A stretch of DNA of 57,329 nt from Octopus bimaculoides (Eukaryota): contig NC_069000.1 in the NCBI RefSeq assembly GCF_001194135.2, positions 6,701,646 to 6,758,974 of the forward strand, in the 5' to 3' direction. Positions 5,861-53,473 of the stretch are shown here, piece after piece. Both the position numbers and the translations under genes were made by a program. Within the stretch, counting starts at the first letter, position 1. Each line of letters begins with the position of its first letter. Under the pieces are notes generated by a model. It saw only the letters and a list, made by a program, of their open reading frames with translations. It did not search any database and was not told where the DNA came from.

Positions 5861-6749
5861 CAGGGTGCGAAGGATAAACTGTCGCCATTTTATATTTTTA
5901 ACTTCGCGCACCTGCATTGTTTATTTTTTTTTATTTAATCGACCACACAACATGGTAGGGTCAGTTGAGCACCATCTGTGAGAGAAACAGCACTATGACG
6001 CAATTCACTCTGCCAAAAATTTGGAAACGACATGCTGTACTGCTTTGCATTTGCACTGGAAGCTCCATTACGAACATTTCAGAGTGTTTGGGTGTCAGTC
6101 TGAAGACGTGCAACCTGAAGACAAGCACCGAGAGTGATAAAAATCAAACATCCAGTCAACATCATTGTGTTTGGAGTGATCACTAGGGATTCGACGTTTT
6201 GCCTCCATCCATCTTCTCACACGGCCTCAGACTCAACACAGAGGCCTACATCAAGTGCCTGGAGGAGGTAGTGCGTCCTGGGTGAAGGGGATGGCTGCTG
6301 GAAGACCTTATTTCTGGCAACAGGACTCTTCACCATGTCACATGAACAGGAGAACCCCGTCATGGCTGTCAGACAAATTCTGCGACAGTATCATCCCTAA
6401 CACCTGGCCATTTGACTCCCCAGACTGCAACCCCCTTGATTATTATGTGTGGGGTACAGTTGAGTGAGAGACCGACAAAACATCTTGTAACACCAAAGAT
6501 GAACCGAAGGCAAAGATTATGGCAGCATTCACCAACTTAAACAAAGAGACCGCCCAGAAGAGTTGCAGGAGATTCCGAAGTTGTCTGGATACTGTGGTTG
6601 GAGCCAATGGCGGTTTTATTGAATAAATTAACTCTTTAGTATTTCAAGATATTTTTATGCGATTTTGGTAAATGTATCTGCTAAAATGAGATGTCAGTGT
6701 TATTTTCATTTTTGCGTATTTTCGACGACAGTTTATTCACCGCACCCTG
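5861..6749 (+). mobile_element. Tc1/mariner superfamily DD37D (maT) transposon, internally deleted, with both TIRs
   Basis: TA|CAGGGTGCGAAGGATAAACTGTCG ... CGACAGTTTATTCACCGCACCCTG|TA gives 24-bp TIRs with 3 mismatches and a TA TSD. Internal WQQDSSPCH...SPDCNPLDYYVWG has 37 residues between the 2nd and 3rd catalytic Asp. Confidence 0.9.
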
Positions 6750-10447: not shown

Positions 10448-11363
10448 CGCTACAATAATGATAAATAAAACATACTTTGTTATTTGTTTTAGGTTGTGAT
10501 ATTTAGTTCTAGATTTTGTCCAAGGTTTTCGAATCTTATTTTTACTTCAAAAGTGGAATAAATTGATTTGCTATGAAAGCGGCAAAAAGGAAACGTCTGA
10601 ACGTGTCCCCCACCTCACACCAGAGAAACAGTTGTATAGCCCTGAAGTTACCTCCACCACCACCACCACCACCACCACCACCATCACCACTAACACTATC
10701 TTCCAGCGGAAGAACAAACACAAGGGTGAAGTAGGCGATTGGAGGGAGATTTGGCTACCGTTTCTTAAAATATATAAAATTATGCGAACATATAAAGGCT
10801 TCGCTTGTTGGCTCAAATAATAAATGACTCATTCAGGTGTGAATTAATTTATACAGGTGTATATCAATTAATTCATACAGGTGTTAATTTAGAAGAGTAT
10901 TTTAAGTGCTTGTTAATGGACATCAATTTGGCTTCATATTTTTATTAAGATTTCTTGGCCACTCCTGTAACACCCTCAACTAATTAGGGTTTACAGGGGG
11001 TTGCAGGAATTTGCAAGGGGTTACAAGCAATAGAAGAAGGTCCGTTTAGTCTTCAAGTGAAGTTTCAGAAAAAGCCCCCTGGTGGCTGTCGATTTAGAGG
11101 TCTGATCCGTGGATTATTGCTGCTGGGGAAAAGCGAGACTTACTAATAACTTCCAAGTAGGAATAGCAACTCCTTTGAATGTCAAAAGATCACTGACCCT
11201 CAACCCTCAACCTAGATTTAAGCAAATCATCAGACGTTTTTCAATCACCTGGCGAAACAGAATTACGCACACAGCCAGCTTCATTCATTACCGAATGTGT
11301 TTTTTCCTTATTTAAAACTAGTGGTTATGATTTGAGAGAGATTTAGTTGTTATGTCGTGCGAC

Positions 11364-11417
11364 CACGTGGGGCGGTTCCTTAAATTGATATTGTGACGTC
11401 ATCGAAAGAACGGAAGT
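11364..11417. promoter_or_regulatory. CpG-containing promoter motif cluster (E-box, GC box, CRE, ETS)
   Basis: CACGTG 11364-69, GGGGCGG 11369-75, TGACGTCA 11394-11401 and CGGAAGT 11411-17 lie within 54 bp, 215-270 bp upstream of the ATG at 11633. Confidence 0.65.
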
Positions 11418-11632
11418 TGAAGAATCACGTTGGCATTCAAAGTTGAACGGTTTTTACGTAAAACATGATTTTGCCTGGGTAAATACAAAACTATGATTAA
11501 TTCTTATCGCTAAATACAATGTATTTGAAAATCTGTTTAAAATTTGTACAAATCGGACGAGAATACCAAAGAGACCACTTGGAATTCGTATTCTTTTGAA
11601 TTATAGTTCTTTTCTCTTTTCAAATTCTCAAG

Positions 11633-12259
11633 ATGGACTTTTTTATTACGTTTCTGTCTTATTATCTGATTACGGCTTTCATACAATATCTGTCAGGTAT
11701 TTTCCCGAGCCAGAAAAAGTACGTCACAATACTTCATGCAGCAACAGTTTCCATCACTATAATCATTTGGATAACTTGTTTCAGTGAATTAATTCTCCGC
11801 GATAAATGCAAACCGGCCATGTTTAAAATGTTAATGTCGTTCATTTTCGAAGGGCGCTGCGTTTTTGTTGAAAAGGAAACGTGGGATTGTATTGCTCATG
11901 AAAAGCTATCAGTGTATTTCTTAAGACCGTTGGGGATTGAAGAAAAAACTTTAAGAAATTTGATTTTAATTGCCTTGTATTTGTTCTGCATTCAGATTAG
12001 TGTCATTATAAACCACTATGAAATCGCAGGATTTATCGACCTCCTCGCTAAACTTGCCTTGGCTTATTTTGTATTTACACTTTTAGCAAGTTTATGTAGC
12101 ATGTTCGAACAGAAGTTTTGTCCAGCGATTACCTTGAAGGAATATTATTTTCTGAGATATTTAAATATATACACCGTACCAGAGGTTTACATTTGCAGAA
12201 TTTTGAAAACCATGAAACTCTTTGACCAATTTAGAATCGGTAACGATCTTTACAAATGA
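11633..12259 (+). CDS. Intronless 208-aa hypothetical membrane protein with about 4 hydrophobic segments; no recognised family
   Basis: 627-nt uninterrupted, non-repetitive ORF in AT-rich DNA. Kozak-like AAGATGG, in-frame stop 36 nt upstream, and AATAAA at 12287-92. Hydrophobic segments at about aa 3-24, 31-50, 110-127 and 133-158. Confidence 0.7.
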   Translation: MDFFITFLSYYLITAFIQYLSGIFPSQKKYVTILHAATVSITIIIWITCFSELILRDKCKPAMFKMLMSFIFEGRCVFVEKETWDCIAHEKLSVYFLRPLGIEEKTLRNLILIALYLFCIQISVIINHYEIAGFIDLLAKLALAYFVFTLLASLCSMFEQKFCPAITLKEYYFLRYLNIYTVPEVYICRILKTMKLFDQFRIGNDLYK

Positions 12260-12384
12260 GAAAATATTTAGGAAGAAATTACCAAGAATAAATTATTCGT
12301 TCATCTCCATCGTTACATAATATTTGAGTTTTAGTCATTAACTATATCTACCTTTCTCTATATGTGTGTGTGTGTGTGTGTGTG

Positions 12385-12396
12385 AGATCGGAAGAG
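12385..12396 (+). other. Illumina adapter remnant at a contig end
   Basis: AGATCGGAAGAG immediately before the N gap; this is the start of the standard Illumina adapter. Confidence 0.85.
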
Positions 12397-13149
12397 NNNN
12401 NNNNNNNNNNNNNNNNNNNNNNNNNNNNNNNNNNNNNNNNNNNNNNNNNNNNNNNNNNNNNNNNNNNNNNNNNNNNNNNNNNNNNNNNNNNNNNNNNNNN
12501 NNNNNNNNNNNNNNNNNNNNNNNNNNNNNNNNNNNNNNNNNNNNNNNNNNNNNNNNNNNNNNNNNNNNNNNNNNNNNNNNNNNNNNNNNNNNNNNNNNNN
12601 NNNCCTACATCTTAAATGTTTCGTTCTCTGTTGCATTGTCACATTTAAAGCAAACAAACCAAACCACGACCAAAAAGTCTTGCAGAAATTCCTCCCTAAT
12701 TATAACAGACTTGATTACTCTTATTCTGCACTGCCGCAATCTTTTATTTTATCTTTTTCTTTTTCTTTATCTTTTACTTTTTCCAGTCATTGGGACCATC
12801 ATTGACACTGGCTTACGATTATTGTCCGATCCCCATATACTGTATTAATATTCCTCGCACTTTCCGTTGCGTTGGTGCCTTTATTGAACTCATAAAGCAA
12901 AATATGCCAAATATGCTCCTTTGTCACTTCCATTACAGCTTTGAAAAAATAACTGTTAAAATGGAACTGCACTCTTCAAAACTTAAGAATAAATATAATA
13001 TAAAATTACTACCTGCTTTTATAGCAAGTTGATGCCGGTAGTTTATCCCGTCCCCCTCCGAATTTTAGTTCATGCAATTGAAAAAACCACATTATTTATG
13101 GGATGACCCAATATACATACATACATACATGTATGTGTGTGTGTGTGCG

Positions 13150-17862: not shown

Positions 17863-26880
<9,018 letters not shown>

Positions 26881-32867: not shown

Positions 32868-35439
32868 ATGTCGAAGGAGATTAGTCCAAGAAAAGACTTC
32901 ATCGCTGGCTATTTCGGAGGTGTAGCCATTGTGGTGGCCGGATACCCAATGGATACTATAAAGGTAGGGTAGGGACCATAAAGGGGTGGGCCATACTTAT
33001 TAGTCACCCATAAAAACTGAGGAGGTAAACATGCTTTTGTGTCGTATGTATATGTATGTATGTATGTATATTTTCTATGTGTATATATGTTTGTGTGTCT
33101 GCAGATATGTGCCTGTGTGTATCTGCATACATGCATACTCTTTTACTCTTTACTCTTTACTCTTTACTCTTTTACTTGTTTCAGTCATTTGACTGCGGCC
33201 ATGCTGGAGCACAGCCTTTAGTCGAGCAAATCGACCCCAGGACTTATTCTTTGTAAGCCTAGTACTTATTCTATCGGTCTTTTTTTGTTTTGACGAACCG
33301 CTAGGTTATGGGGATGTAAACACACCAGCATCGGTTGTCGAGCGATGTTGGAGGGACAAACACAGACACACAAACATATACACACACACATACATATATA
33401 TATACATATATACGACAGGCTTCTTTCAGTTTCCGTCTACCAAATCTACTCATAAGGCTTTGGTCGGCCTGAGGCTATAGTAGAAGATACTTGCCCAAGA
33501 TGCCACGCAGTAGGACTGAACCCGGAACCATATATATATACATACATACATACACATGTTTACATAACAGCGCGTGCATATCTCATTAGTAAATACTAAA
33601 CTTATACAATATTTACACAATCCCATCAATGTCTTTTAATTATAATTTCCTAATTAGCTGACTCATTTCCTAATTAGCAACCCATCTTCACAAGATTACC
33701 CCAGAATCAGTTGTTCATATGTTCCTTGCCCTAATAATTACTGGTATAAGCTTTAATCTATTTGTCTGGGTGGAGTAGCTTTTATCTATAATCTTTTAAT
33801 TGTTTCAGTTATTAGACTGCGGCCATGCTGGAGCACCACTTTGAAAATTTTTCAGCTGAATAAATCAACCCAACTTTTTTTTCATGCCTGGTACTTACTA
33901 CTCCATAGGTCTCTTTTGTCAAAATGCTAAGTTACGGGGATGTAAACACCAACACTGGTTGTCAAGCATGGACAGAAAGACATACTCATGCATATGTGAC
34001 TGGCTTCTTTTAGTTTCCATCAATCAAATCCACTCACAAGGCTTTGGTTGGCCCAAGGCACTATAATAGAAGACACGTGCCCAAGGTGCCCACACATTTA
34101 GACTGAAACCTGAACCATGTGGTTGTGGAGCAAGCTTCTTACCACACAGCCATGCCTGCACCTATATGTATCTAGACTTCATTTATTCAGCATAGATATT
34201 TTCACTTCCACTGATCTTTTAAACTTATAGCATCATCCACTCATCTCTTAGTGTGGCTGTGTGGTTGAGAAGGTTGCTTTCGAAAGACACAATTTTGAAT
34301 TCAATCCCATGACAGCTTGGATAAGGTTTTTTTTTACTAAAGCCTTCAACAAACCAAAACTATTTACTCCTACTCTCCAAATACCTCCCTCCAACTCTCT
34401 TTCTCCCTCATTCTCACACTCTTTCTACTCTTCCTCCTTCTTTAATACATGACCTCATTTTAGGTTCGAATACAAACAATGCCACAGATCCCGGGCCAGC
34501 CTTCACCTTATCGAAACATGTACGATTGTGGAATGCACATCATCAAACGAGAGGTAAGATATGAAATACCAATTACTTATATCCTATTATTCTATTGTGG
34601 GTTTCAACCAGAGGCTGTGGCCATGCTGGAGTACTGCCATTAGTGAAATATCAATTTCCTCCATTGGTTAATGACTTGTAGGGACAAACTCAGAGTATTT
34701 CTTTGATTCCTTCACCCACAGAGTGTCCGAGGGTTATACAAAGGAATGGCTATTCCTCTGGTCATCATTCCACCAATGTTTGCACTTTGGTTCTTCACAT
34801 TTGGCGTCGGTAAAAAGTTACAACAGAAATCACCCCAGGAACAATTAAGGTAATGGTCATTTTTTTTTATGTATAAACACCTTTCAAGACATGGTTTTTT
34901 TTAGAATTCTAGGAAATATTTTATCTTGAACCGATGAGGAAGCCATTATGTTGTATGTTGGTCTGCTAAAAATAGCAACCAAATCTTTATTGAATCAAAT
35001 CCCATCATCTTATGAGAGAATACATTAAATGATATTATCTTAGATCCTCCAAAAAACGACAAGGTTGTCATAACTGAATTAGTTTTTATTATTTTTTACT
35101 CAATTTTATTATTTTTTTATTTTTATTTTTTTTGGCTCAATTTTATTTTTTTATTTTTTATTCAATTCTATAATTTTTAAAATATATTTTTTTAATTAGC
35201 TTTTGCTCAAATTTATTATTTTATTATTCTTTATTACCCAATTTTATTATTCTTTTTGTTGTTTTTACTCACTTTTATTATTTTTTATTCTTTTTTTACT
35301 CAATTTTATTACATTTATTATTTTCATTGCTCAATTTTATTTTTCTTATTCATTTTTATACTCAATCTTATTATTTTTTTTATCTTTCACTCAATTTTAT
35401 TATCTTTTATTATATTTTTTACTCAGTTCTATTATCATT

Positions 35440-37039: not shown

Positions 37040-39452
37040 ACGCATGCACATATATCTGTTAGGAGGCACAAAGCACTTATACACACACTTCTACACACAC
37101 AACGATAACTTCTGCCTAGCAAATTCAATCACAAGGCTTCAGTCAGTTCAAGATGATAATAGCAGAAGACACTTGCCCAAGGTACCATGCAGTGGGACTG
37201 AACCCAAAACCATGGCTGTAAAAGAATAAAAGAAAATCACATCATTGAAATTACATAGCTATGAGATAATGCTTGATGAATTCAAAACCAATGTGAAAAA
37301 ATAAGCATTACATTTGACAAAACAATCTCAATGCTTAAGGCTTTCTATATTAATTAATTACAAGGCAGCAAATTGGCAGAATCGTTAGCACACCGGACAA
37401 AATATTTAGTCACATTTTGTCTGTCTTTAAGCTCTGAGTTCAAATTTTGTCTAGGTCAGTCAATAAAATAAATACCAGTCATGTACAAGGGTCAATGTGA
37501 TCAACTAGCCCCCTCCTCCAAACTTGTTGGATTTGTACCAAAATTTGAAATCAATATATGAATTAATTAGTCATTAGCAGGCCAGGAAAAATGCTGAATG
37601 GCTTTCCATCCTGCTAATGCTCTGAGTTCAAATTCTGCCAAAGTCAACTTTGCTTTTCCTCTTTTCGGGGACAATAAAATAGATACCAATCATGTACTGG
37701 GGTCGATGTGATCAACTAGCCCTCTACCCCAGCCTTGCTGGACTTGTACCAAACTTTGAAATCAATATATTAATTAATTATCGTGTATTTAACTAAATTC
37801 TTTTTGCTTCCTTACCATTTCAGATTCAGCAAGAATCCAATGGAAAGGCTAAATATCAGGGACCCATTGATTGTCTGCGTAAATTATATAAGGAAGGGGG
37901 CATCAGGTGGATCTACAGGGGCACCACAGCAACTTTTGTCAGAGGTTTGTAGTTGTTGTTATTCATGTTATAAGTGGTGGTCAGAAAGATCCCCATCCTC
38001 GGAATTTTTCAGGAAATCCCTCCCCCACTTCAGCCCCCTCCACAGAACTTTCCAGGAAGTCCCTCTCCCCCCTTCATCCCTCCCTCCTCGGAGTTTTCCA
38101 GGAAGTACCTCTCCTCCCCTTCAACACTTCCAGGAAGTCCCAATTCCTCTGAGTTTTCCAGGAAGTCAACCTCTTCCCCTTCAACTCCCCCTTCTCATAA
38201 TGTTAACAGAAGAAATGACTGATGGTTATGTGCAGACCCTTCTGAAGTTCAAAGTGTTATGCATACAAAAATTTCCTGCAACTGTCATGGTTTTATGGGT
38301 TGTCAGCAATGAAGGACATGTGATGCCTCCTTACTTCTTTCCACAAGGCCTTAAAATTAACTCTGCTGCCTACATTGAATGCAAAGCGTTCACATTTCTT
38401 TGTGCCCCTGCAACCCTGTTCTGTTCTTAGGAAGTGGCACCTCAGTTGGTGCAGTTTTGCCAGGTAGGGCACTCTTTTGCCTGCATTTCCTGAATATTTA
38501 TACATAAACACTTGCTTACACCCATACGCACACATTGACATGTGAATACACACACACACACATGCACACTCTCTCATACATACATACACATACATATATG
38601 CATTCACACATAAATACATGCCCATGTTCCAGGTGGGCATGTATTACTTACCAGGCAGGTAATCAGAGACTGTGCATTGAAACTACAACAATTGTAGTGT
38701 GAAATATATATTAGTCATTTACCCACTCTCCCCATACAGACACACACACACATCCTACCCCCACCCGAATCTCCAACTCCATCCCCATTGACGAAAAGCT
38801 TCAATGGCTGCAGCAACGAAAAATTTGACACCAAATAATAAATGTCTAATTGAACTTAACAGTTTACGCGTGCATTGAATGGCTAATATGTGTGTCTTCC
38901 ACACTGCATTGTACATGTGCAGTCATACATGTGCAGCAATCATACATGTGCTGCAATCGTACGTATGCACACATGTATAACTAAGTTCATTTGCATTACC
39001 ATTATTGCTGTTGTTGTCGTTGTTGCGGTCGTCATTGCCATCATTGTTTTGCCGTTGTTGTTGTCCTATGTTTCTCCCCTAAGGCTTTCACTCTACACAC
39101 GCCAGCTCAACTTGATTCGTATTTATTAGTTGAAAGACACCTGGTGTTATTTTCTTGTTGTTTGTATTTGTAACTGTGTAGCATTTTCTCCATTTTTTTG
39201 TCTTTGTTGTCGTACACATTCACTTGCTTTCTCCCAAAATATTTAATGCCTTTAGCTCAGATTTTTGGGGCCAGCCAGATTTGAACAGTCTGAAGTATAA
39301 CCGGCTGAAACTGTAAGGATAATCTGGAAACTTGACTGAAGAGAGAAGACTGTAAATGATCCATCCTTGTTTTTTCCTGTTCATCTTTGTATCATTTATC
39401 TGTCCAGATGTTTTATTGTTGTCTGTTATGCGCTTGTTCCATTTTTTGGATA

Positions 39453-39485
<33 letters not shown>

Positions 39486-42253
39486 NNNNNNNNNNNNNNN
39501 NNNNNNNNNNNNNNNNNNNNNNNNNNNNNNNNNNNNNNNNNNNNGATATACATGGATCAGGATTCTATTTCATGACTTATGAGTTTATGCAACGTCTTCT
39601 GTCAGAAGACAACAAAAGGTAAAAAAATCACTGTTAAAATATATAAAGAATGACCAGTAAAAATTGTGTTTATGATTTACTTTTTTATTCTTTTATTTGT
39701 TTCAGTCATTTGACTGTGGCCATGCTGGAGCACCACCTTTAATCAAACAAATCGACCCCAGAGCTTATTCTTTGTAGGCCTAGTACTTATTCTTTTGGCC
39801 TCTTTGGCCAAACCTCTAAGTTGAGTCTTTTTGGCATCTCTGTAGTTGCAAGAAGGCATAGATGCTCTCTTGGCCTTCTCACCCATTAACCCAGTGGAAC
39901 ATCTAGGTTGTGACAACTGGAGGGAGGGAGAGGGCTATACCAGTACTCAACTGTACTCATTACAGCTGGAGCAACAAGAGATGAAGTACCTTGTTCAAGA
40001 ACACAGCATGTTACTCACTCCAGGAATTTGAACCCACAATCATAGTCATGAATCCAACACCTTAACTTCTTGGCCATGTTCCTTTTTTCATCTTTAGATC
40101 CTCCTACACCTCTTAATGCATTGTGCATTGTGTGAAAGTTGTCTGTGATGTTCTTAATAAATATTACTCCATAAATTCATTAAGATAAAATAATTACAGT
40201 CAATTAATTGTAGCTATATTATTTCAAATATTTAGTATGAAGTTTAAGCTTTCTACACTGCTCAATACATTGTGAAGCAAGCTCTCTCCACCAGGTTCAG
40301 CTACCTGCTATTTTTGTTCAACCATCCATATAATGTTGGTTGTCCTTGGGTCATCTTGAAATGTCCAGTACCTGGTGTTCTTCAGCCTGCCTCTTTTACG
40401 TTTGCTGTCAGGTGGTGTCCAGGTCATGGCTGTTTTTGATCATTTTGACACAGGATCCTAAGTTCAAGAAGTCAAACACACACATGCTTGTGTGTACACA
40501 AGCACATGGGTTTACTGAGTTATGTCAGTCTGTTTATTCATTTGCAGATATGAATCTCTGAGTGCCAGAAATACTCTGTTGGCTGGAGGTGTGGCTGGAC
40601 TGGTCAACTGGTCATTGGCATTACCAGCAGATGTGGTTAAATCAAGAATACAAATAGGTAAGTTGATACATTGTACAGGTGTGCATGTGCATGCGTGTGT
40701 GTGTGTGTGTGTGTATGTGTGACTCAGTGCTAGATTAACCATTAAGCAAAATAAGCACTTGCTTAGGGCATCAAGGAAAGAAGGGGGCCAAAATTTCGGT
40801 TCCAATCAAACCATGTAACTTATGCCAGCATGGAAAGTAGACACTAAATGGTGATGATGATGACGATGATGATGATGATGATGATGGTTAATAACTATTT
40901 CTTCTCATTATTGAGTGTGATTTCAATTGCTTAAATTGATTCACTACATTAATTATATTAATTCTATATTAATTATATATATTAGTATCATGTTTAATCA
41001 TTTATTGGTTCAATTCTATTCTTCTATCAAGCACCCATAGAAAACCAGAATCTAAGAATCAAAGATGTCTTCAAACAATTATGGAAGGAAGGTGGAATCC
41101 AAGCCTTGTACAAAGGAACAACACCAGTTTTGACCAGAGCTTTTGTAGGGAATGCTGTAAGTGTGACATTTGTTGTGGTCAAATTAGATTTGTTTTCTTG
41201 TTCTGGAATTGCATAAGGTTGCGTCAGTGATATCCTTGTCAACAAAGAAGAGATATGCTTCAGCATATTTAACAGGAAGAAACTAACACGATTTCGTAAT
41301 GTTACTCTTCAACAGAATAACGAACAATAATTATCTATAACACTTTTATGTAAACAATTATTATAGTCATATTGCTTTTTTTTCTAACTTTTGTATGACA
41401 TATTCAATGGAGAAAAGCATTTATATAACTTTCTCACATGGTGGCTGTCAGAGGAGCTCAAAACAGGATCAATCAATTTGTCTGTTTACAAATAGCATTC
41501 TACACCACATTCTTTATAACAATGGCCAGAATAGATATAACTTGCAACACAGTTGTATATACGACACACTTTTGAAAGATCTAATGTGAAACTGGTCAAG
41601 AGTATTTCTATATTATAAAATATAAATAAATTTTATTTAATTCGAATATATTCACTGAACATTTTCCTCCACTTGTTTGAATTAATAACAATTTATATAT
41701 ATATGTTAAGAAGTGCATATATTTATGTTTCTTTTCTTAGATATATAAACTACTGACCAATATATATATATATTTATATTTAATTATGATTACAAAAATA
41801 TAATTATAACAAAGGGTGTTGAATTGACAATACCTATACACTAGAAATAGATAATAATTAATAACATCGAAAAATACCTTAGGAATGAAAACCCAGATTC
41901 AAAATTTCCCCCAAGACATCTGATGAAGACTGGAGGGTATATCAGCCGAAACATTGTGTTAACAACAAACAAGATGAGGACAAATATCCATCGAATGTAA
42001 ATAATGTAAATAATGAATACACTAATTTGTTTTAGATCTGGCTGTGTGTGTGTGTGTGTGTGAACTATACAACATTTGCTGTACAATTACCATCATGTTT
42101 GACTTCCAATTGCAATACTTCTATATTTAATTCATTTGCTCCCAAACTCTCATTTCTTTTTTTTCTGTCTAATTTTTTTTTTAATTCCAGGCCTGCCTCC
42201 TCACATACGAAATAGTAGTTAGAGTTCTAAACACTCTTCTTCCAAATCTATGA
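32868..42253 (+). CDS. SLC25A20: Mitochondrial carnitine/acylcarnitine carrier-like protein (SLC25 family, 298 aa)
   Basis: Exons 32868-32963, 34464-34553, 34722-34849, 35985-36075, 37824-37944, 39546-39618 (acceptor mostly in the gap), 40548-40657, 41032-41156 and 42191-42253; 897 nt, phases consistent. Three Px[DE]xx[KR] motifs (PMDTIK, PGERIK, PADVVK), plus GKKLQQK, ERIKCLLQ, YFMTYE and C-terminal PNL typical of CACT. Exon sizes 128/91/73/110/125/63 match human SLC25A20 as I recall them. An acceptor at 32856-57 implies an unlocated 5' UTR exon. Confidence 0.93.
33150..33530 (-). mobile_element. Near full-length abundant SINE in carrier intron 1
   Basis: TTGTTTCAGTCATTTGACTGCGGCCATGCTGGAGCAC...GTAAACACACCAGCATCGGTTGTC...CTTCTTTCAGTTTCCGTCTACC. 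Copies at 33790-34160, 39690-39830 and 43770-43990. Confidence 0.85.
35080..35430. repeat. Degenerate AT-rich minisatellite (core TTTACTCAATTTTATT) in carrier intron 3
   Basis: Roughly ten or more irregularly spaced copies of CTCAATT(T/C)TATT are visible. Confidence 0.75.
38200..38392 (+). mobile_element. maT/Tc1 transposase fragment
   Basis: Across frameshifts it reads NRRND*WLCADPSEV...KFPATVMVLWVVSNEGHVMPPYFFPQGLKINSAAYIEC; same family as 5861-6749. Confidence 0.75.
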
Positions 42254-42929: not shown

Positions 42930-43993
42930 TGNNNNNNNNNNNNNNNNNNNNNNNNNNNNNNNNNNNNNNNNNNNNNNNNNNNNNNNNNNNNNNNNNNNNN
43001 NNNNNNNNNNNNNNNNNNNNNNNNNNNNNNNNNNNNNNNNNNNNNNNNNNNNNNNNNNNNNNNNNNNNNNNNNNNNNNNNNNNNNNNNNNNNNNNNNNNN
43101 NNNNNNNNNNNNNNNNNNNNNNNNNNNNNNNNNNNNNNNNNNNNNNNNNNNNNNNNNNNNNNNNNNNNNNNNNNNNNNNNNNNNNNNNNNNNNNNNNNNN
43201 NNNNNNNNNNNNNNNNNNNNNNNNNNNNNNNNNNNNNNNNNNNNNNNNNNNNNNNNNNNNNNNNNNNNNNNNNNNNNNNNNNNNNNNNNNNNNNNNNNNN
43301 NNNNNNNNNNNNNNNNNNNNNNNNNNNNNNNNNNNNNNNNNNNNNNNNNNNNNNNNNNNNNNNNNNNNNNNNNNNNNNNNNNNNNNNNNNNNNNNNNNNN
43401 NNNNNNNNNNNNNNNNNNNNNNNNNNNNNNNNNNNNNNNNNNNNNNNNNNNNNNNNNNNNNNNNNNNNNNNNNNNNNNNNNNNNNNNNNNNNNNNNNNNN
43501 NNNNNNNNNNNNNNNNNNNNNNNNNNNNNNNNNNNNNNNNNNNNNNNNNNNNNNNNNNNNNNNNNNNNNNNNNNNNNNNNNNNNNNNNNNNNNNNNNNNN
43601 NNNNNNNNNNNNNNNNNNNNNNNNNNNNNNNNNNNNNNNNNNNNNNNNNNNNNNNNNNNNNNNNNNNNNNNNNNNNNNNNNNNNNNNNNNNNNNNNNNNN
43701 NNNNNNNNNNNNNNNNNNNNNNNNNNNNNNNNNNNNNNNNNNNNNNNNNNNNNNNNNNNNNNNNNNNNTTTACTCTTTACTCTTTACTCTTTACTCTTTT
43801 ACTCTTTTACTTGTTTCAGTCATGTGACTGTGGCCATGCTGGAGCACTGCCTTTAGTCGAGCAAATTGACCCCAGGACTTATTCTTTGTAAGTCCAGTAC
43901 TTATTCTATCGGTCTCTTTTGTTGAACCGCTAAGTTACGGGGATGTAAACACACCAGCATCGGTTGTCAAGCGATGTTGGGGGGACAAACACA

Positions 43994-44049
<56 letters not shown>

Positions 44050-45520: not shown

Positions 45521-48500
45521 TCAGGGAGACCTAATATTTCTTTTATATATCAAAGATTTTAAGATATGTGGTGCAGGCAAATTTTCTCGTAAAATATCAT
45601 TGAAAGTATTGCAGTTTCCTGGTTGTTGAAAGTTTTGATCAATTCTCTTATTGTACAAATGCCATAATTCTTTTAGCAAATCTTCAAGAACCAAATTCGT
45701 TGTGTTCTTAGCAATCATTCGTAATATAAAAAACCCATCATTCCGCAGATAATCAGTTGTGAAATGCTTGAACATTTTCTTACCATCAGCCTTTATAAGT
45801 ATATTTTTAGAGGGGCTCAAATGGTGCAAAACATATTTACTCTGACGTTTGGAAAAGATTGCACGATAAATCCATAGTACAACATTTGCACATGTAACCA
45901 CAGCAACAAAGATTAACCAAAACCAAAGAAAAATGAATATTTTTTCATTGAATAGATTAACTGGAAGAACACATTGGAGAGTGTAGAGATGAATGTTCTG
46001 TAACTGCCTTAATTCTAAATCACAGAGAGTCACACGAGGAAACCTTGCAGATCCTTTTGAAGGAATTGTGCGAAAAATATCATAGGGTGTAAAATTGTCT
46101 GAGAGGAATGCATTCAATAAGAAAAACTGTCCAATGACATTTACAGTGAACAAGAATTTTACGAAGATATAGAAGCTGATAAAATATGTCCCTTCCTTTT
46201 TTGAAAACGGAAGCCAAGAAACATTTAAATTTCTTCCTTTTATTGTTACTACACGGTGCAACTTCCGTTTCCAGCAGCCTTCCAACCACATGTCAATGAA
46301 ACAAGCAATATTTCTTATATTCATCTTATACTTTTCTGGCGACTCTAACAGAGAGCTCTGAGCCAAAGCAATGATTTTCTTTAATCTAATACCAGACATT
46401 GAGTTCACAAATCTCCATACCATATCAGGAGTCTAGAAAAACAAAAAAAAAACAAAAAGAAAAGAAAAAACAAGACATAAATAAATAAAAATAGTAATAA
46501 ATTGACTTTCAAAAAAAATACATAAAGTGCTGATGCCATGTAAAAAACATCCAGTCCACACTTTAAAGTGGTTGGCATTTGGAAGGACATCCAGCTGTAA
46601 AAACCTTGCCAAAACTGACCTCGCTTGTGCTTGTACCACGTAAAAAGTACTCTGTCCATTCTGCTGAATGGTTGAGGCTAGGATGGGCATTCAGTCTTAA
46701 AAACCCTGCAAAAACAGACACAGAAGTCTGGTGCAAGCTCCTGCCAAATCATCCAACCGATGCCATCATGGAAGGCGGATATTAAATGATGTTCATGATG
46801 TTTCTTTCTTATATTTCTATTATTTTTCTGCAAAACTATCCACCAGTAACTTAGGGTAGCAGAACAGATTAACATCCATAGACAGGGTGTTGGGGGCTAA
46901 ATTTGAGTTTGCATAAAGGGAAAAGAGAACACAATATCCCATCTAGCAATAAAAGTATTTTAAAAAGTCGAAAAGAATCAACTAAATTATGGCTGGGAAA
47001 AACCAGTTTACTCAAAGCAGCTGCCCTCAGCTTCATCACAGCCTCAAGACAGCTCTGGAACCTGGCACTATGTCCCTGGGGAAGACCTTTCATCACCTCC
47101 TTGATCTTGGCCACCAGCTCAGCTTCAGTGTTGCAGACAGAATGGTTGGTGTCTTTCTCAGCCACATTGCACAGATAGTAACCCATGGGGTTACAACTAG
47201 GGGAATTAAGAGGCTAGAAATTGGGGCTGATGAAGTTGTAGAGTTTCTCCAACAAACGCTGTTGACTCTTTGTGAACCCTGTTTCCAGCAGCAACCCTTT
47301 CCAGTCAAGGTTTGATCACAGTCTCCAGCAGCTCTGCGTAGTCATCTGAACTAACCCTAAGGCCCTCTTCCTGCAGTTGTTGTCCTATGACAACAATACA
47401 AAATGTCAGTGTTTCTATTAATAGATATTACTGGCATATGTGTAGTCTTTCTTGGAGGCAGAACTGGCAATTGTGAATGTCAGGTGAGTAAGTGCGGGGT
47501 GTTGAATATATTGTTTCATGATAGATGAATTGTTATTGAGATCTCAGAGTATCTAGATGAAGTGATGAAAAAGACAAGAAGGTTAAGTTTTCGTTTCCCA
47601 ACATCTGAAGGAGTGCATATGCTGTGCATATCTCTCCTTGAAGTAGTTGGCTGTCATTCCTGTGCAGTGTCTAGTAATACCATTCCTGTGTAGTGTCTAG
47701 TAATACCATTCCTGTGTAGTGTCTAGCAATACTATTTTCTCCTCCCAGTTGCAATATACTTGGTGACCCTGTCAGTGATGGTGCTACATATAAAGAACAG
47801 GTGCCAGTGGAACATAAAAAGGGCTGGTGCTGGTGTAATGTAAAAAGCAATGGTGCCATGTAAAAGCACCCAGTACATTCTGTATGGTGGTTGGCATTAG
47901 GAAGGGCATCCAGCTGTAGAAGCCTGGTACAGCTGCCAGCCTTGCTAGCACCTGTCAAACCATCCAACCCATGCCAAGATGGAGAGTAGATGTTAAATGA
48001 TTATGATGATGATGATGATATCACAAAATAAAAAAAAATAAAAACAAAGAAAAGAGAACTGTAAATGGTTCACCTTAAAAAGAGTTGCCATGAAAAGGAA
48101 AATAATAGGTGCCCACTGGTAATAAGTAACTTCTTCTTCTGTGCGACTTGTAGGGTCCGTAGGAATGGGGTACTTCATTCCAATATAGTAAGTGTTTGAA
48201 ACCCAACAATATGATTTCGCATAATTTACCTCTTGTTTTGGCCAGTTCGGAGGAGCTAGGCAATGGATTGGCTCTCCTATGAGGTAGGTAAATGTGACAA
48301 TAACAGCAAATATAATTAACAGAAATACAGTCCATGTATGGCTAATGGCACTACACAAATCCTCGTTAATTTCAGTCTGTGATACCAGCTTTTTTGCAAG
48401 GAAAGCAGCTCTGAAATAGAGAAATAAAATTGATTAATTAATTAATCAGTTAATTAAAAGCATGTAAATTTTTAAAGCAAAAAAAAAAATTAAAGTAAAT

Positions 48501-51046: not shown

Positions 51047-53473
51047 CATGTTTGTAAGGAATTTCATTAGGGTGACAGAGTAATTTAAAAAATGGTATGT
51101 AAAAGATAATTTATTTTAATAGCATACTTTTCTGTTAGAAAATATATTTTTTCTTGCACACACATGGACTCGCTTGATACGGAATGGGGTTAGAGGCTTA
51201 AATAAATTTATTTGTTGTTGCTTTCACCCCCTATAAAAACATATTGTTCATGCTGAGTGTGTATATTTGTATGCATGTGATTAAAAAAGGTAAGTAAAAG
51301 GTAATTTATTTTAATAGCATAATTTTCAGTGAGTAAATGTGTTTTTTCTTACACATACACATGTGTGCGTGGGCTCACTTGATGCAGGGTGAGGTTAAAT
51401 ATTTAAATAACAAATTTTTTTGTTATTACTTAAATCGCAGCAATTAACCACTACGTCATCGTTTTGTAAAATGTTTATGGGGAGAAAAATATAGAAAAAC
51501 ATCAATACACATTAGAGTGACAAAGAAACGAGGAAGATACCAGGTGGTCGTGGGGTGTGATACAAACACCAACTAAATCTCTCTTAAATCACCTTTTCGT
51601 CTGAAAGTTATTTTGAAATTATAAACAGAAAGAAATTGCAGATTTGGATTGTCTATATTTTAAAAGTATGATTATAAAAAATTTTTTTGCCAAAAGCCGA
51701 AATTTTAGGATTTATTTTTAATGAAAGAATTTTTTTTAAAATTTGCTATTGTTTTGAAATCACATTTCATTTTCTGTTGGAAAATTAAGGAAATTAGGAT
51801 TGTGATGGCATTTGCCGATTTCCAATATTTTTACCTTCAAGGCTTCAAAGGCTGTTTTTAAGTGTGCAGTGCAAAAGAAGAAAAAAAAAAAAAAAAACAG
51901 TCCAAAGTTGGTACTAATCTACAAACTTCAGCATGAATTAACTCCTTATAATCTGAAATGGTCCATAGTCACCCAAGCTGAACTGTACACTGGATATAAC
52001 AAGTGTGATCTCTGCATTGCTGATGTCTTCTCCATTATGCAATCCATGGATTATTTAAACAAACAAGATAGCAAGATTTTTACCTGTGGACACAAATTAT
52101 GCCATTCGTTCTCTAAGTACAAATTACAGCAATCCCTCTCACCATCCCCTAACTATCCCCCTTGCCCTTAACTGATATCCCTCAACATATCTTTTTACAA
52201 CATGCAACCTTTTAACCACCTTTATATTTTTTAAACTTTTTATTTATTCTATATTCTCCACCTGTTTTCCTTATCCTTCGTACTCTTATAAGTTTCCATA
52301 ACTTTTCTATCTGCACATCCCATCCGCACATGATAATATACAAATATCCACACATGTGCACATATCTACTAGTTTCTACAGATGCACAACATATACACAC
52401 ATGCATGCTAATACACACTCACATAATCTCAGATTTCAACTGTTACTACCATCTCTCACTTCACTGGCTGCCCCTAGATTTTAAAACTGAATTACTACTA
52501 GCAACTGGATGGGCAACACTAAGTCTACTAATTTGACCAAAAATACATTATCTTCCACCTCCCACTCCTTCACTCCCCACCCTATTCATTTCAAATACCA
52601 CTCCTACATCTTCATCCTTCTGATTCTGTTTAAATGGCTTTATAGAATGCTACAACATGTTTGCTTGCCTCTCCCTCAACAGAGTACATATGACTCCATT
52701 ATTGTTGGCACTCCGTCGTTTATGACGTCGAGGGTTCCAGTTGATCCGATCAACAGAACAGCCTGCTTGTGAAATTAACGTGCAAGTGGCTGAGCACTCC
52801 ACAGGCACGTGTACCCTTAACGTAGTTCTCGGGGATATTCAGCGTGACACAATGTGACAAGGCTGACCCTTTGAATTACAGGCACAAAAGAAACAGGAAG
52901 TAAGAGTGAGAGAAAGTTGTGGTGGAAGAGTACAGCAGGGTTCGCCACCACCCCCTGCCGGAGCCTCGTGGAGCTTTAGGTGTTTTCACTCAATAAACAC
53001 TCAAAACGCCCGATGCGGGAATTGAAACCGCGATCCTATGACCACGAGTCCGCTGCCCTAACCACTGGGCCATTGCGCCTCCATATGACCCCAGTATACA
53101 TTCATAAAGACATCTCCCCAGCCATTTTAAATACCAAACCTTCTCTCCCCACCTGCCCCTCTTTACTCATATTCTTCTCTGTTACAAGCTTACCCCCTCC
53201 CATATATATATTTTTTTTCTATTTTTACTTCTTCTTCACAACTATGTTTTCCTCTTGAACTGTGCTTTCAACACATTTTGATCGAATCCCCAACAATTTA
53301 ACATGAGAACTCCTAACAACAATGTAAGCTTCATGTAATCAAACTATCCTTGACCCAAAGAGTAGCTTGTGGTCTACACCTCGTTTAAATAATTTACTAC
53401 TTCCAAGGTTCTGCTAGCTATGAAACATATGTAGGCTGGACTTTATCAACTCCATTCCCTAATTCTTGAATTA

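What the first reader, a model, noticed from the sequence alone, without database searches (positions are those of the whole stretch)
11633..12292. Orphan intronless four-TM protein with a complete transcription unit (top novelty candidate)
Seen: 208 non-repetitive codons without a stop. A rough estimate at ~7% stop frequency gives ~3e-7 per segment, so chance is unlikely. Kozak context, upstream promoter and AATAAA 28 nt after the stop are all present. Predicted layout: two helical hairpins (aa ~3-50 and ~110-158) joined by a ~60-aa loop with three Cys, plus a ~50-aa C-tail. The large loop is between TM2 and TM3, unlike claudins (large ECL1) or tetraspanins (large EC2). I recognise no family motif. 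Inference: a lineage-restricted or fast-evolving small membrane protein, possibly born by retroposition since neighbouring genes are intron-rich.
Basis: partly seen in the sequence, partly recalled or inferred. Interest (0 to 1): 0.75.

Follow-up and report, generated by a model that had tools for sequence, protein, structure and literature searches.

The report
Conserved orphan octopus membrane protein gene
A 208-codon, single-coding-exon gene in the Octopus bimaculoides genome encodes a small multi-pass membrane protein that a second octopus species keeps intact under purifying selection, yet it matches nothing among about 15 billion catalogued proteins, so it is a real gene of unknown function.

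Summary
The ORF is real: 11633..12259 (+), 208 aa, Kozak-type ATG, AATAAA 28 nt after the stop. Conservation settles the question. Genomic contigs from a related octopus (SRA runs SRR11869384-94) carry the same 208-codon frame with no indel. There are 24 synonymous and 18 non-synonymous differences (dN/dS 0.17, Fisher p=5e-8). The ORF is 93% identical, against 76-84% for nearby non-coding DNA.

A 290-bp upstream block is also conserved (92%). It holds the window's only TGACGTCA and CGGAAGT motifs plus a CACGTG. The neighbouring innexin identifies the window as Octopus bimaculoides.

No homologue was found by Pfam, PDB sequences, an exhaustive phmmer scan of 1.84 billion cluster representatives, or a profile search at E<=10. 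AlphaFold models are unusable (pLDDT 40-48).

So this is a genuine, selectively maintained orphan gene for a small four-segment membrane protein. Its most constrained part is the 54-aa Cys-bearing central loop, which charge balance places in the cytoplasm. "Fast-evolving" and "retroposed" are not supported. Expression, transcript structure, phylogenetic spread and function remain untested.

The parts
11345..11440 (+). Conserved promoter-like block with CACGTG (11364-11369), TGACGTCA (11394-11401) and CGGAAGT (11411-11417); CpG-rich
   Evidence: It is 93.6% identical to the relative, against 76-84% for neutral-looking non-coding DNA. TGACGTCA and CGGAAGT are unique in the window. CpG o/e is 1.77, against 0.51 window-wide. 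Promoter function is inferred, not shown.
11441..11632 (+). Conserved leader: a putative 5' UTR, or a UTR intron from donor-like CTGG|GTAAAT at 11479 to the pyrimidine tract + CAAG at 11632. It contains upstream ATGs at 11465, 11493 and 11519.
   Evidence: It is 91.7% identical with no indel. The uATGs are conserved, but the third uORF's length is polymorphic in the relative. No Rfam family matches. Transcript structure is untested.
11633..12259 (+). Coding sequence, 208 codons + TGA
   Evidence: The frame is intact and free of indels in five contigs of a related species. There are 42 differences, split 12/6/24 by codon position, with dN/dS 0.17.
11639..11791 (+). Hydrophobic hairpin 1 (aa 3-53: segments 3-23 and 31-53 joined by FPSQKKY)
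   Evidence: Kyte-Doolittle profile. 6 of the 18 aa substitutions fall here, all conservative.
11792..11953 (+). Central loop, aa 54-107, with C59, C76, C86; 9 K/R and 8 D/E; the most conserved part of the protein
   Evidence: It has 1 substitution in 54 residues (H89Y), against 17 in the other 154. All Cys are invariant.
11954..12103 (+). Hydrophobic hairpin 2 (aa 108-157: segments 108-128 and 133-157 joined by YEIA)
   Evidence: Kyte-Doolittle profile; 6 substitutions.
12104..12256 (+). C-terminal tail, aa 158-208, 8 K/R, C163 and C188
   Evidence: 5 substitutions.
12287..12292 (+). AATAAA poly(A)-signal-like hexamer, followed by the conserved U/GU-rich TTTGAGTTTT
   Evidence: It is conserved in the relative. 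The hexamer is common in the window. Use as a poly(A) site is untested.

Best explanation
This is a genuine stand-alone protein-coding gene of Octopus bimaculoides. It is kept by purifying selection in at least one other octopus species.

Shown:
- The coding frame, the hydrophobic layout, the selective constraint and the absence of detectable homologues.

Inferred from the sequence:
- The product is a 208-aa integral membrane protein made of two helical hairpins.
- By the positive-inside rule, the N-terminus, the 54-aa central loop and the 51-aa tail carry 17 K/R together. The two short hairpin turns carry 2.
- The most likely topology is therefore N-in/C-in. The short turns face the lumen or outside. 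The conserved Cys-bearing loop and the tail face the cytoplasm.

Inferred with low confidence (about 0.3):
- The hairpins anchor the protein in an endomembrane or the plasma membrane. Substitutions there are frequent but conservative.
- The near-invariant cytoplasmic loop is the working surface. It would bind a partner, or be lipid- or metal-modified on its cysteines.
- On this view the protein acts as a small adaptor or regulatory subunit, not as an enzyme, channel or adhesion molecule.

Also inferred:
- Transcription is probably driven by the conserved CRE/E-box/ETS-type block 200-290 bp upstream.
For: Orthologue in a second species:
- The ORF is intact with no indel in five independent genomic contigs, which are colinear with window 11278-12351.
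- There are 24 synonymous and 18 non-synonymous differences: dN 0.037, dS 0.218, dN/dS 0.17.
- Fisher p=5e-8. A ts/tv-matched simulation gives P(<=18 aa changes)=3e-4.
- The flanks have 4 indel events in about 450 bp and the ORF has none.
- ORF identity is 93.3%. Far flanks are 84% and non-coding DNA at the innexin locus is 76-84%.
- Within the relative, the only ORF polymorphism among five runs is synonymous.

Protein features:
- Hydrophobic architecture exceeds the compositional expectation.
- The loop has 1 of 18 substitutions in 26% of the length, and all 8 Cys are invariant.
- The K/R distribution is 17 versus 2.

Upstream block:
- It is conserved and CpG-rich, and holds the window's only TGACGTCA and CGGAAGT.

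Other frames and repeats:
- No domain is found in any other frame of 11300-12396.
- There is no repeat, TIR or paralogue at the locus.
Against: - No transcript, ribosome-profiling or peptide evidence was obtainable. No RNA-derived contig with this protein is in the collection. O. bimaculoides runs seem absent from it in general, since the window's innexin also lacks a Logan source.
- Only two species are available, so the selection estimate rests on 42 substitutions.
- Three conserved upstream ATGs would hamper translation if the TSS lies at the conserved block.
- A pyrimidine tract plus AG directly before the ATG could mean the ORF is a downstream exon.
- Topology and mechanism rest on hydropathy and charge counts only. 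TM1 is weakly hydrophobic.
- Both AlphaFold models are unusable (pLDDT 47.8 and 40.1).
Confidence: 0.75

Rival explanations
1. De novo origin: the gene arose within the Octopus lineage from T-rich non-coding DNA. This is the 'TM-first' route, in which thymine-rich sequence spontaneously encodes transmembrane helices. It later came under purifying selection. This rival concerns origin and is compatible with the best explanation.
For: - There is no homologue at any distance among 1.84e9 cluster representatives or in a profile search at E<=10.
- Extrapolating the observed score decay (419 to 391 bits) suggests homologues would stay detectable to about 26-32 times the distance between the two octopuses. 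Divergence alone therefore explains the silence poorly.
- The sense strand is 36% T, with 43% T at codon position 2, in a 36%-GC genome.
- The TM-first model is described in PMC7005711.
Against: - 208 codons with four hydrophobic segments, 8 invariant Cys and a strongly constrained loop is long and elaborate for a young de novo gene.
- Random ORFs of this composition rarely look like this.
- No outgroup genome could be examined, so no non-coding ancestral state has been shown.
- Unannotated single-exon ORFs in other cephalopod genomes would be invisible to the protein databases.
Confidence: 0.2
2. An old gene whose relatives exist but were not seen. Either it is a very divergent member of a known small-membrane-protein family, or its orthologues in other cephalopods are simply unannotated.
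For: - Short, compositionally biased TM proteins are a known hard case for homology detection (general point in PMC7660931, listed).
- The databases hold annotated or called proteins only.
- O. sinensis sequence could be reached only within 10 kb of the innexin, not at the syntenic position of the ORF.
Against: - The slow observed rate (dN 0.037) predicts easy detection across cephalopods if a relative were annotated.
- Pfam gave zero hits even at E<=10, and PDB sequences gave none.
- The profile search found nothing.
Confidence: 0.3
3. Retrogene: a processed mRNA copy of an intron-containing parent gene, inserted here.
For: - The coding region has no intron, while neighbouring genes have introns. 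Examples are the innexin exons at 45521-46423 and 47993-48358, and the EF-hand exons at 24.4 and 26.3 kb.
Against: - No parent or paralogue exists in the window or in any database.
- There is no poly(A) remnant after the AATAAA.
- There are no flanking direct repeats.
- The 290 bp upstream are conserved like a native promoter and leader.
Confidence: 0.05
4. Terminal coding exon of a larger gene: the AG at 11631-11632, after a conserved pyrimidine tract, is a splice acceptor, and the ATG is an internal Met.
For: - The TTCTTTTCTCTTTTCAAATTCTCAAG|ATG context is conserved.
- Donor-like GTAAAT and GTAAAA sites lie upstream at 11479 and 11458.
Against: - The nearest candidate upstream exon (ATG 11465 ... 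GG|GTAAAT) would join out of frame (and my reading).
- No coding-like conserved ORF lies in 11278-11632, and the third uORF is polymorphic for a stop.
- No exon-like ORF with a Pfam domain lies within 10 kb upstream.
- A non-coding 5' exon is still possible. That would change only 'intronless'.
Confidence: 0.1
5. Chance ORF, or a conserved non-coding element that happens to be open. An AT-rich genome makes hydrophobic-looking ORFs.
For: - An ORF this long arises in about 1 of 200 simulated windows, so hundreds are expected genome-wide.
- No expression evidence exists.
Against: - The codon-position pattern of differences is 12/6/24, dN/dS is 0.17, and there are no stops or indels in the orthologue.
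- Hydrophobic layout is beyond the compositional expectation.
Confidence: 0.03
6. Transposon-borne or transposon-derived ORF. A mariner fragment lies just downstream.
For: - A Mos1-type HTH_48 fragment lies at 12802-12975 on the minus strand.
Against: - The fragment is beyond an assembly gap, on the other strand, and is only the N-terminal 58 aa.
- No transposase domain is found in any frame of 11300-12396.
- The locus is single-copy in the window, without TIRs or LTRs.
- No similar protein exists elsewhere, which is unlike a mobile-element ORF.
Confidence: 0.02

Closest known systems
Taxonomically restricted ('orphan') genes of cephalopods and other animals
   Same: There is no detectable homologue outside a narrow lineage. 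The product is short, sits in a gene-poor repeat-rich region, and is already present in UniRef as an unnamed prediction.
   Different: This one has direct comparative evidence of purifying selection and a conserved upstream block, which many orphan gene models lack. Its true phylogenetic range is not known.
TM-first de novo genes, e.g. yeast YBR196C-A (PMC7005711)
   Same: The coding strand is T-rich, the product is dominated by transmembrane helices, and there are no homologues.
   Different: It is four times longer, has four segments and a constrained soluble loop, and is under purifying rather than positive selection. No non-coding ancestor has been shown.
Reticulon-homology-domain / REEP-type hairpin proteins (resemblance of layout only, recalled from general knowledge)
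   Same: The layout is two hydrophobic hairpins with very short turns, separated by a ~55-65-aa hydrophilic loop and followed by a ~50-aa tail. The predicted topology is N-in/C-in.
   Different: There is no sequence match to Pfam Reticulon or any other family. Each hairpin here is about 50 aa, long enough for two full membrane spans rather than a wedge. No strong amphipathic helix is found in the tail (maximum hydrophobic moment 0.41).
Claudin/PMP22 and tetraspanin four-TM families
   Same: Four predicted TM segments, small size, and cysteines in a loop.
   Different: The large loop lies between TM2 and TM3, not TM1-2 or TM3-4. The TM1-2 loop is 7 aa and the TM3-4 loop 4 aa. There is no CCG or W..GLW..C..C motif and no Pfam match. 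Charge balance places the large loop in the cytoplasm.

Membership tests
Any curated protein family (Pfam-A, 24,736 models) | Sequence match to the family profile at or near the gathering score | tested here: not met
   There were zero families at E<=10 for the window protein and zero at E<=0.01 for the orthologue.
Any protein with a solved structure | Sequence or fold similarity to a PDB chain | tested here: inconclusive
   phmmer against PDB sequences gave 0 hits at E<=10. The best Foldseek hit had E=2.4 and TM 0.15, but the query model is unreliable, with pLDDT 47.8.
Tetraspanin | Large extracellular loop between TM3 and TM4 carrying a CCG motif | tested here: not met
   The TM3-TM4 loop is 4 aa (YEIA) and the sequence contains no CC dipeptide.
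Claudin/PMP22 | Large first extracellular loop (TM1-TM2) with a conserved W...C...C signature | tested here: not met
   The TM1-TM2 loop is 7 aa (FPSQKKY). There is no PF00822 match.
Innexin (neighbouring gene family, four TM with Cys loops) | Match to PF00876, including the YYQW motif region | tested here: not met
   The window's true innexin exons hit PF00876 at 7.6e-48 and 2.5e-22. The orphan gives nothing.
Reticulon homology domain | Two hydrophobic hairpins, a ~60-aa loop and a ~50-aa tail (layout) | tested here: met
   The segment lengths are 51, 54, 50 and 51 aa. This is layout only and does not establish membership.
Reticulon homology domain | Sequence match to the Pfam Reticulon profile | tested here: not met
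   No Pfam hit at E<=10.
Retrogene | An intron-containing parent gene elsewhere, a poly(A) remnant at the 3' end, and target-site duplications | tested here: not met
   No paralogue was found anywhere. There is no A-run after 12292 and no flanking direct repeats. The whole O. bimaculoides genome itself was not searchable.
De novo gene | Orthologous non-coding sequence in outgroup genomes at the syntenic site | not testable with these tools
   No eukaryotic genome collection can be searched by similarity. O. sinensis DNA could be fetched only within 10 kb of the innexin gene, and that did not contain the locus.
Expressed protein-coding gene | A transcript and a protein product | not testable with these tools
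   Only genomic contigs carry the ORF. No RNA-derived record exists.
Protein-coding gene under selection | Frame conservation and dN/dS well below 1 in an orthologue | tested here: met
   dN/dS is 0.17 with p=5e-8 and no indels.

The most novel reading that the evidence does not exclude
A 208-aa, four-segment membrane protein gene that was born de novo from T-rich non-coding DNA inside the Octopus lineage. It has since acquired its own CRE/E-box/ETS promoter and come under strong purifying selection. That would make it an unusually long and mature animal example of the 'TM-first' route of gene birth, with a Cys-bearing cytoplasmic loop as a newly evolved functional surface.
Probability: 0.2. 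Interest if true: 0.6.

Novelty: new member of a known kind. Interest (0 to 1): 0.4.

Why it matters
Cephalopod genomes hold many unplaced gene models, and most cannot be told apart from annotation noise. This one now has comparative proof of coding constraint, a defined conserved upstream block and a clear domain layout. That makes it a tractable candidate for asking what lineage-restricted membrane proteins do in octopus. With genome-level synteny, it could also show whether such a gene arose de novo. As it stands it is one orphan among many with no known function, so it is useful rather than surprising.

Tried and rejected
- Pfam on both orthologues and on all other frames of the locus: nothing.
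- PDB sequence search: nothing.
- Word-indexed search of 5.8e9 clusters with the protein, and with a two-sequence profile at E<=10: only itself.
- Exhaustive phmmer over 1.84e9 representatives: only itself.
- AlphaFold2, single sequence and two-sequence alignment: pLDDT 47.8 and 40.1, unusable.
- Foldseek against PDB on the poor model: no hit better than E=2.4.
- Rfam and tRNA scans of the locus: only microsatellite artefacts.
- Repeat, TIR and paralogue search: only microsatellites.
- Literature search for the SRA run numbers, to name the related species: no paper.
- Attempt to reach the syntenic O. sinensis site through the innexin orthologue. The 36-kb locus L009 is colinear with the window's innexin but ends about 20 kb short of where the ORF should be, and tblastn found nothing in it.
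- Exact-sequence look-up of the window protein in assemblies: not on record.
- Considered and rejected: chance ORF, retrogene, mariner-borne ORF, conserved non-coding element. Reasons are under the rival explanations.

Full report
**What is there.** The window has about 36% GC, many microsatellites and many N gaps. The plus strand has an ATG-to-TGA ORF at 11633..12259, 208 codons. The stop-to-stop frame starts at 11600, so the ORF cannot be extended upstream without splicing. The start context is CTCAAGATGG. A Kyte-Doolittle profile gives strong hydrophobic segments at about aa 31-53, 108-128 and 133-157, and a weaker one at 3-23. Cysteines are at positions 49, 59, 76, 86, 119, 155, 163 and 188.

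In 200 first-order-Markov simulations of the window, the longest ATG-ORF averaged 121 aa and one reached 208. That is roughly p=0.005 per window, which means hundreds of such ORFs in a genome of this size. AATAAA occurs about once per kb here. Hydrophobicity is above what composition gives: only 2% of random stop-free ORFs have three or more strong segments, and 0.2% reach its GRAVY of 0.68.

**Comparative evidence.**
- The protein's 90% cluster has one other member, P0002, found on five 1.0-1.3-kb contigs from SRA runs SRR11869384-94.
- These contigs are colinear with window 11278-12351 and break at microsatellites.
- Contigs from the same runs that carry the neighbouring innexin exon are colinear through intron and 3' flank. 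The runs are therefore genomic DNA of a related octopus.
- In that species the 208-codon frame is intact with no indel.
- The 42 differences fall 12/6/24 on codon positions 1/2/3. By Nei-Gojobori counting there are 18 non-synonymous and 24 synonymous changes: dN 0.037, dS 0.218, dN/dS 0.17.
- Fisher p=5e-8. A simulation that keeps the observed 33:9 transition:transversion ratio gives P(<=18 amino-acid changes)=3e-4.
- The ORF is 93.3% identical. Its far flanks are 84%, and intron and 3' flank at the innexin locus are 76-84%. The flanks carry four indel events in about 450 bp.
- Among the five runs, the only ORF polymorphism is synonymous.

**Whose genome.** The 300-aa exon at 45524-46423 (-) is 100% identical to 'innexin unc-9 [Octopus bimaculoides]', so the window is O. 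bimaculoides. The related species could not be named. Its innexin exon is 80% identical in protein. The colinear O. sinensis gene is only 49% identical. The orphan is thus better conserved than its bona fide neighbour, which argues against 'fast-evolving'.

**Surroundings.**
- The 290 bp upstream (11345-11632) are 92% identical between species, well above the neutral level.
- The distal part holds CACGTG (11364), TGACGTCA (11394) and CGGAAGT (11411). The latter two occur nowhere else in 57 kb.
- CpG o/e is 1.77 in this core and 1.13 in the ORF, against 0.51 for the window.
- I read this as a native promoter of CRE/E-box/ETS type (inference from established motif knowledge). It could not be tested.
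- The proximal part holds three conserved upstream ATGs (11465, 11493, 11519). The third uORF is polymorphic for a stop in the relative, so it is not a conserved coding sequence.
- A donor-like CTGG|GTAAAT (11479), and a conserved pyrimidine tract ending in CAAG directly before the ATG, leave room for a 5'-UTR intron.
- Alternatively, a TATA-like TTTAAAAT near 11.54 kb could give a short leader free of uATGs (my reading).
- 'Complete transcription unit' therefore remains unproven.
- No Rfam family, tRNA, TIR, LTR or dispersed copy is present at the locus.
- Downstream, the assembly ends in (GT)n followed by an Illumina adapter and an N gap. A 58-aa Mos1-type HTH fragment lies beyond the gap on the other strand. 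No transposase signal overlaps the ORF in any frame.

**What family?** None that can be detected.
- Pfam: zero hits at E<=10. The orthologue also gives zero.
- PDB sequences: zero hits.
- Word-indexed search of 5.8e9 clusters: only itself.
- Exhaustive phmmer over 1.84e9 representatives: only itself.
- Two-sequence profile at E<=10: only itself.
- AlphaFold2 gave pLDDT 47.8 (single sequence) and 40.1 (two sequences).
- Foldseek on the better model gave nothing below E=2.4.

A crude two-point extrapolation of score decay (419 bits against self, 391 against the orthologue) suggests homologues would stay above 45-70 bits out to about 26-32 times the distance between the two octopuses. Plain divergence therefore explains the silence poorly. 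The databases contain only annotated or called proteins, however, and unannotated single-exon ORFs in other cephalopod genomes would be missed. I could not search those genomes. The O. sinensis locus reachable through the innexin ended short of the syntenic site.

**How it probably works.**
- Shown: two hydrophobic hairpins (aa 3-53 and 108-157) with turns of 7 and 4 residues, a 54-aa loop and a 51-aa tail.
- Shown: 12 of the 18 substitutions lie in the hydrophobic segments and are conservative (I/V/L/F, S/T, H/Y). Five lie in the tail and one in the loop (H89Y). All eight Cys are invariant.
- Inferred: the loop and tail carry 17 K/R and the short turns carry 2. The positive-inside rule therefore predicts N-in/C-in, with the loop and tail in the cytoplasm.
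- Inferred: the loop cysteines would be free, acylated or metal-binding rather than disulfide-bonded.
- My best guess, at about 0.3: a membrane-anchored adaptor or regulatory subunit whose working surface is the central loop.
- The layout recalls reticulon-homology and REEP hairpin proteins. The hairpins are long enough for full spans, no strong amphipathic helix is present and there is no sequence match. This is a resemblance of layout, not membership.

**Origin.** Retroposition lacks every diagnostic feature: there is no parent gene, no A-tail and no target-site duplication, and the promoter block is conserved. De novo birth from T-rich DNA (the TM-first model, PMC7005711) is compatible with the T-rich coding strand (36% T; 43% at codon position 2) and with the absence of homologues. 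It is unproven, and the protein is long and elaborate for such an origin. An old gene with unannotated orthologues is at least as likely.

**Verdict.** This is a real, selectively maintained, single-coding-exon orphan gene for a small multi-pass membrane protein. Function, expression and age are open. Orphan genes are common in cephalopods, so interest is moderate.

Noticed in passing
window 12385-12396 (abutting N gap 12397-12603): An exact Illumina adapter core, AGATCGGAAGAG, sits between a (GT)n run and the N gap. It occurs once in the window, with 0 expected by chance. It is an assembly artefact, so the sequence just 3' of the gene is not trustworthy beyond about 12384.
   Followed up: yes
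window 12802-12975 (-): A 58-aa fragment matches the Mos1 transposase HTH domain (PF17906, E=2e-14). It is a mariner-type remnant about 540 bp downstream of the ORF on the other strand. No transposase catalytic domain was found nearby.
   Followed up: partly
window 45521-46423 and 47993-48358 (-); loci L006-L009: This is an innexin gene, identical to O. bimaculoides 'innexin unc-9'. It evolves fast: 80% aa and 86% nt identity to the unnamed related octopus, and only 49% aa to the colinear O. sinensis gene. It is less constrained than the orphan ORF.
   Followed up: partly
window 24448-24828 and 26298-26636 (+): Two ORF segments with EF-hand motifs (PF13405/PF00036). They are probably exons of a calmodulin-like gene about 12 kb downstream of the orphan.
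   Followed up: no
window 11465, 11493, 11519: Three upstream ATGs lie in the conserved leader (uORFs of 5, 6 and 26 codons). The ATGs are conserved in the relative. The third uORF carries a polymorphic premature stop there. They may act as translational control, or may be removed by splicing or lie upstream of the real TSS.
   Followed up: partly
window 11340-12259 versus the whole window: CpG observed/expected is 1.1-1.8 across the orphan's upstream block and ORF, against 0.51 for the window. This suggests the locus escapes germline methylation, unlike its surroundings.
   Followed up: no
window 52708-53065, 33163-33531, 43794-44021, 39680-39822; L009 751-1106, 6616-6961, 22260-22458: Short dispersed repeats (about 130-370 bp) are 80-89% identical between this window and an O. 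sinensis locus, and occur several times within the window. They are probably a SINE-like family shared across Octopus.
   Followed up: no
window 6180-6464 (+), 37783-38430 (+), 46869-47186 (-): These ORF fragments look to me like decayed Tc1/mariner-type transposase pieces. Pfam gave no hit at E<=0.01, so this is unconfirmed.
   Followed up: partly
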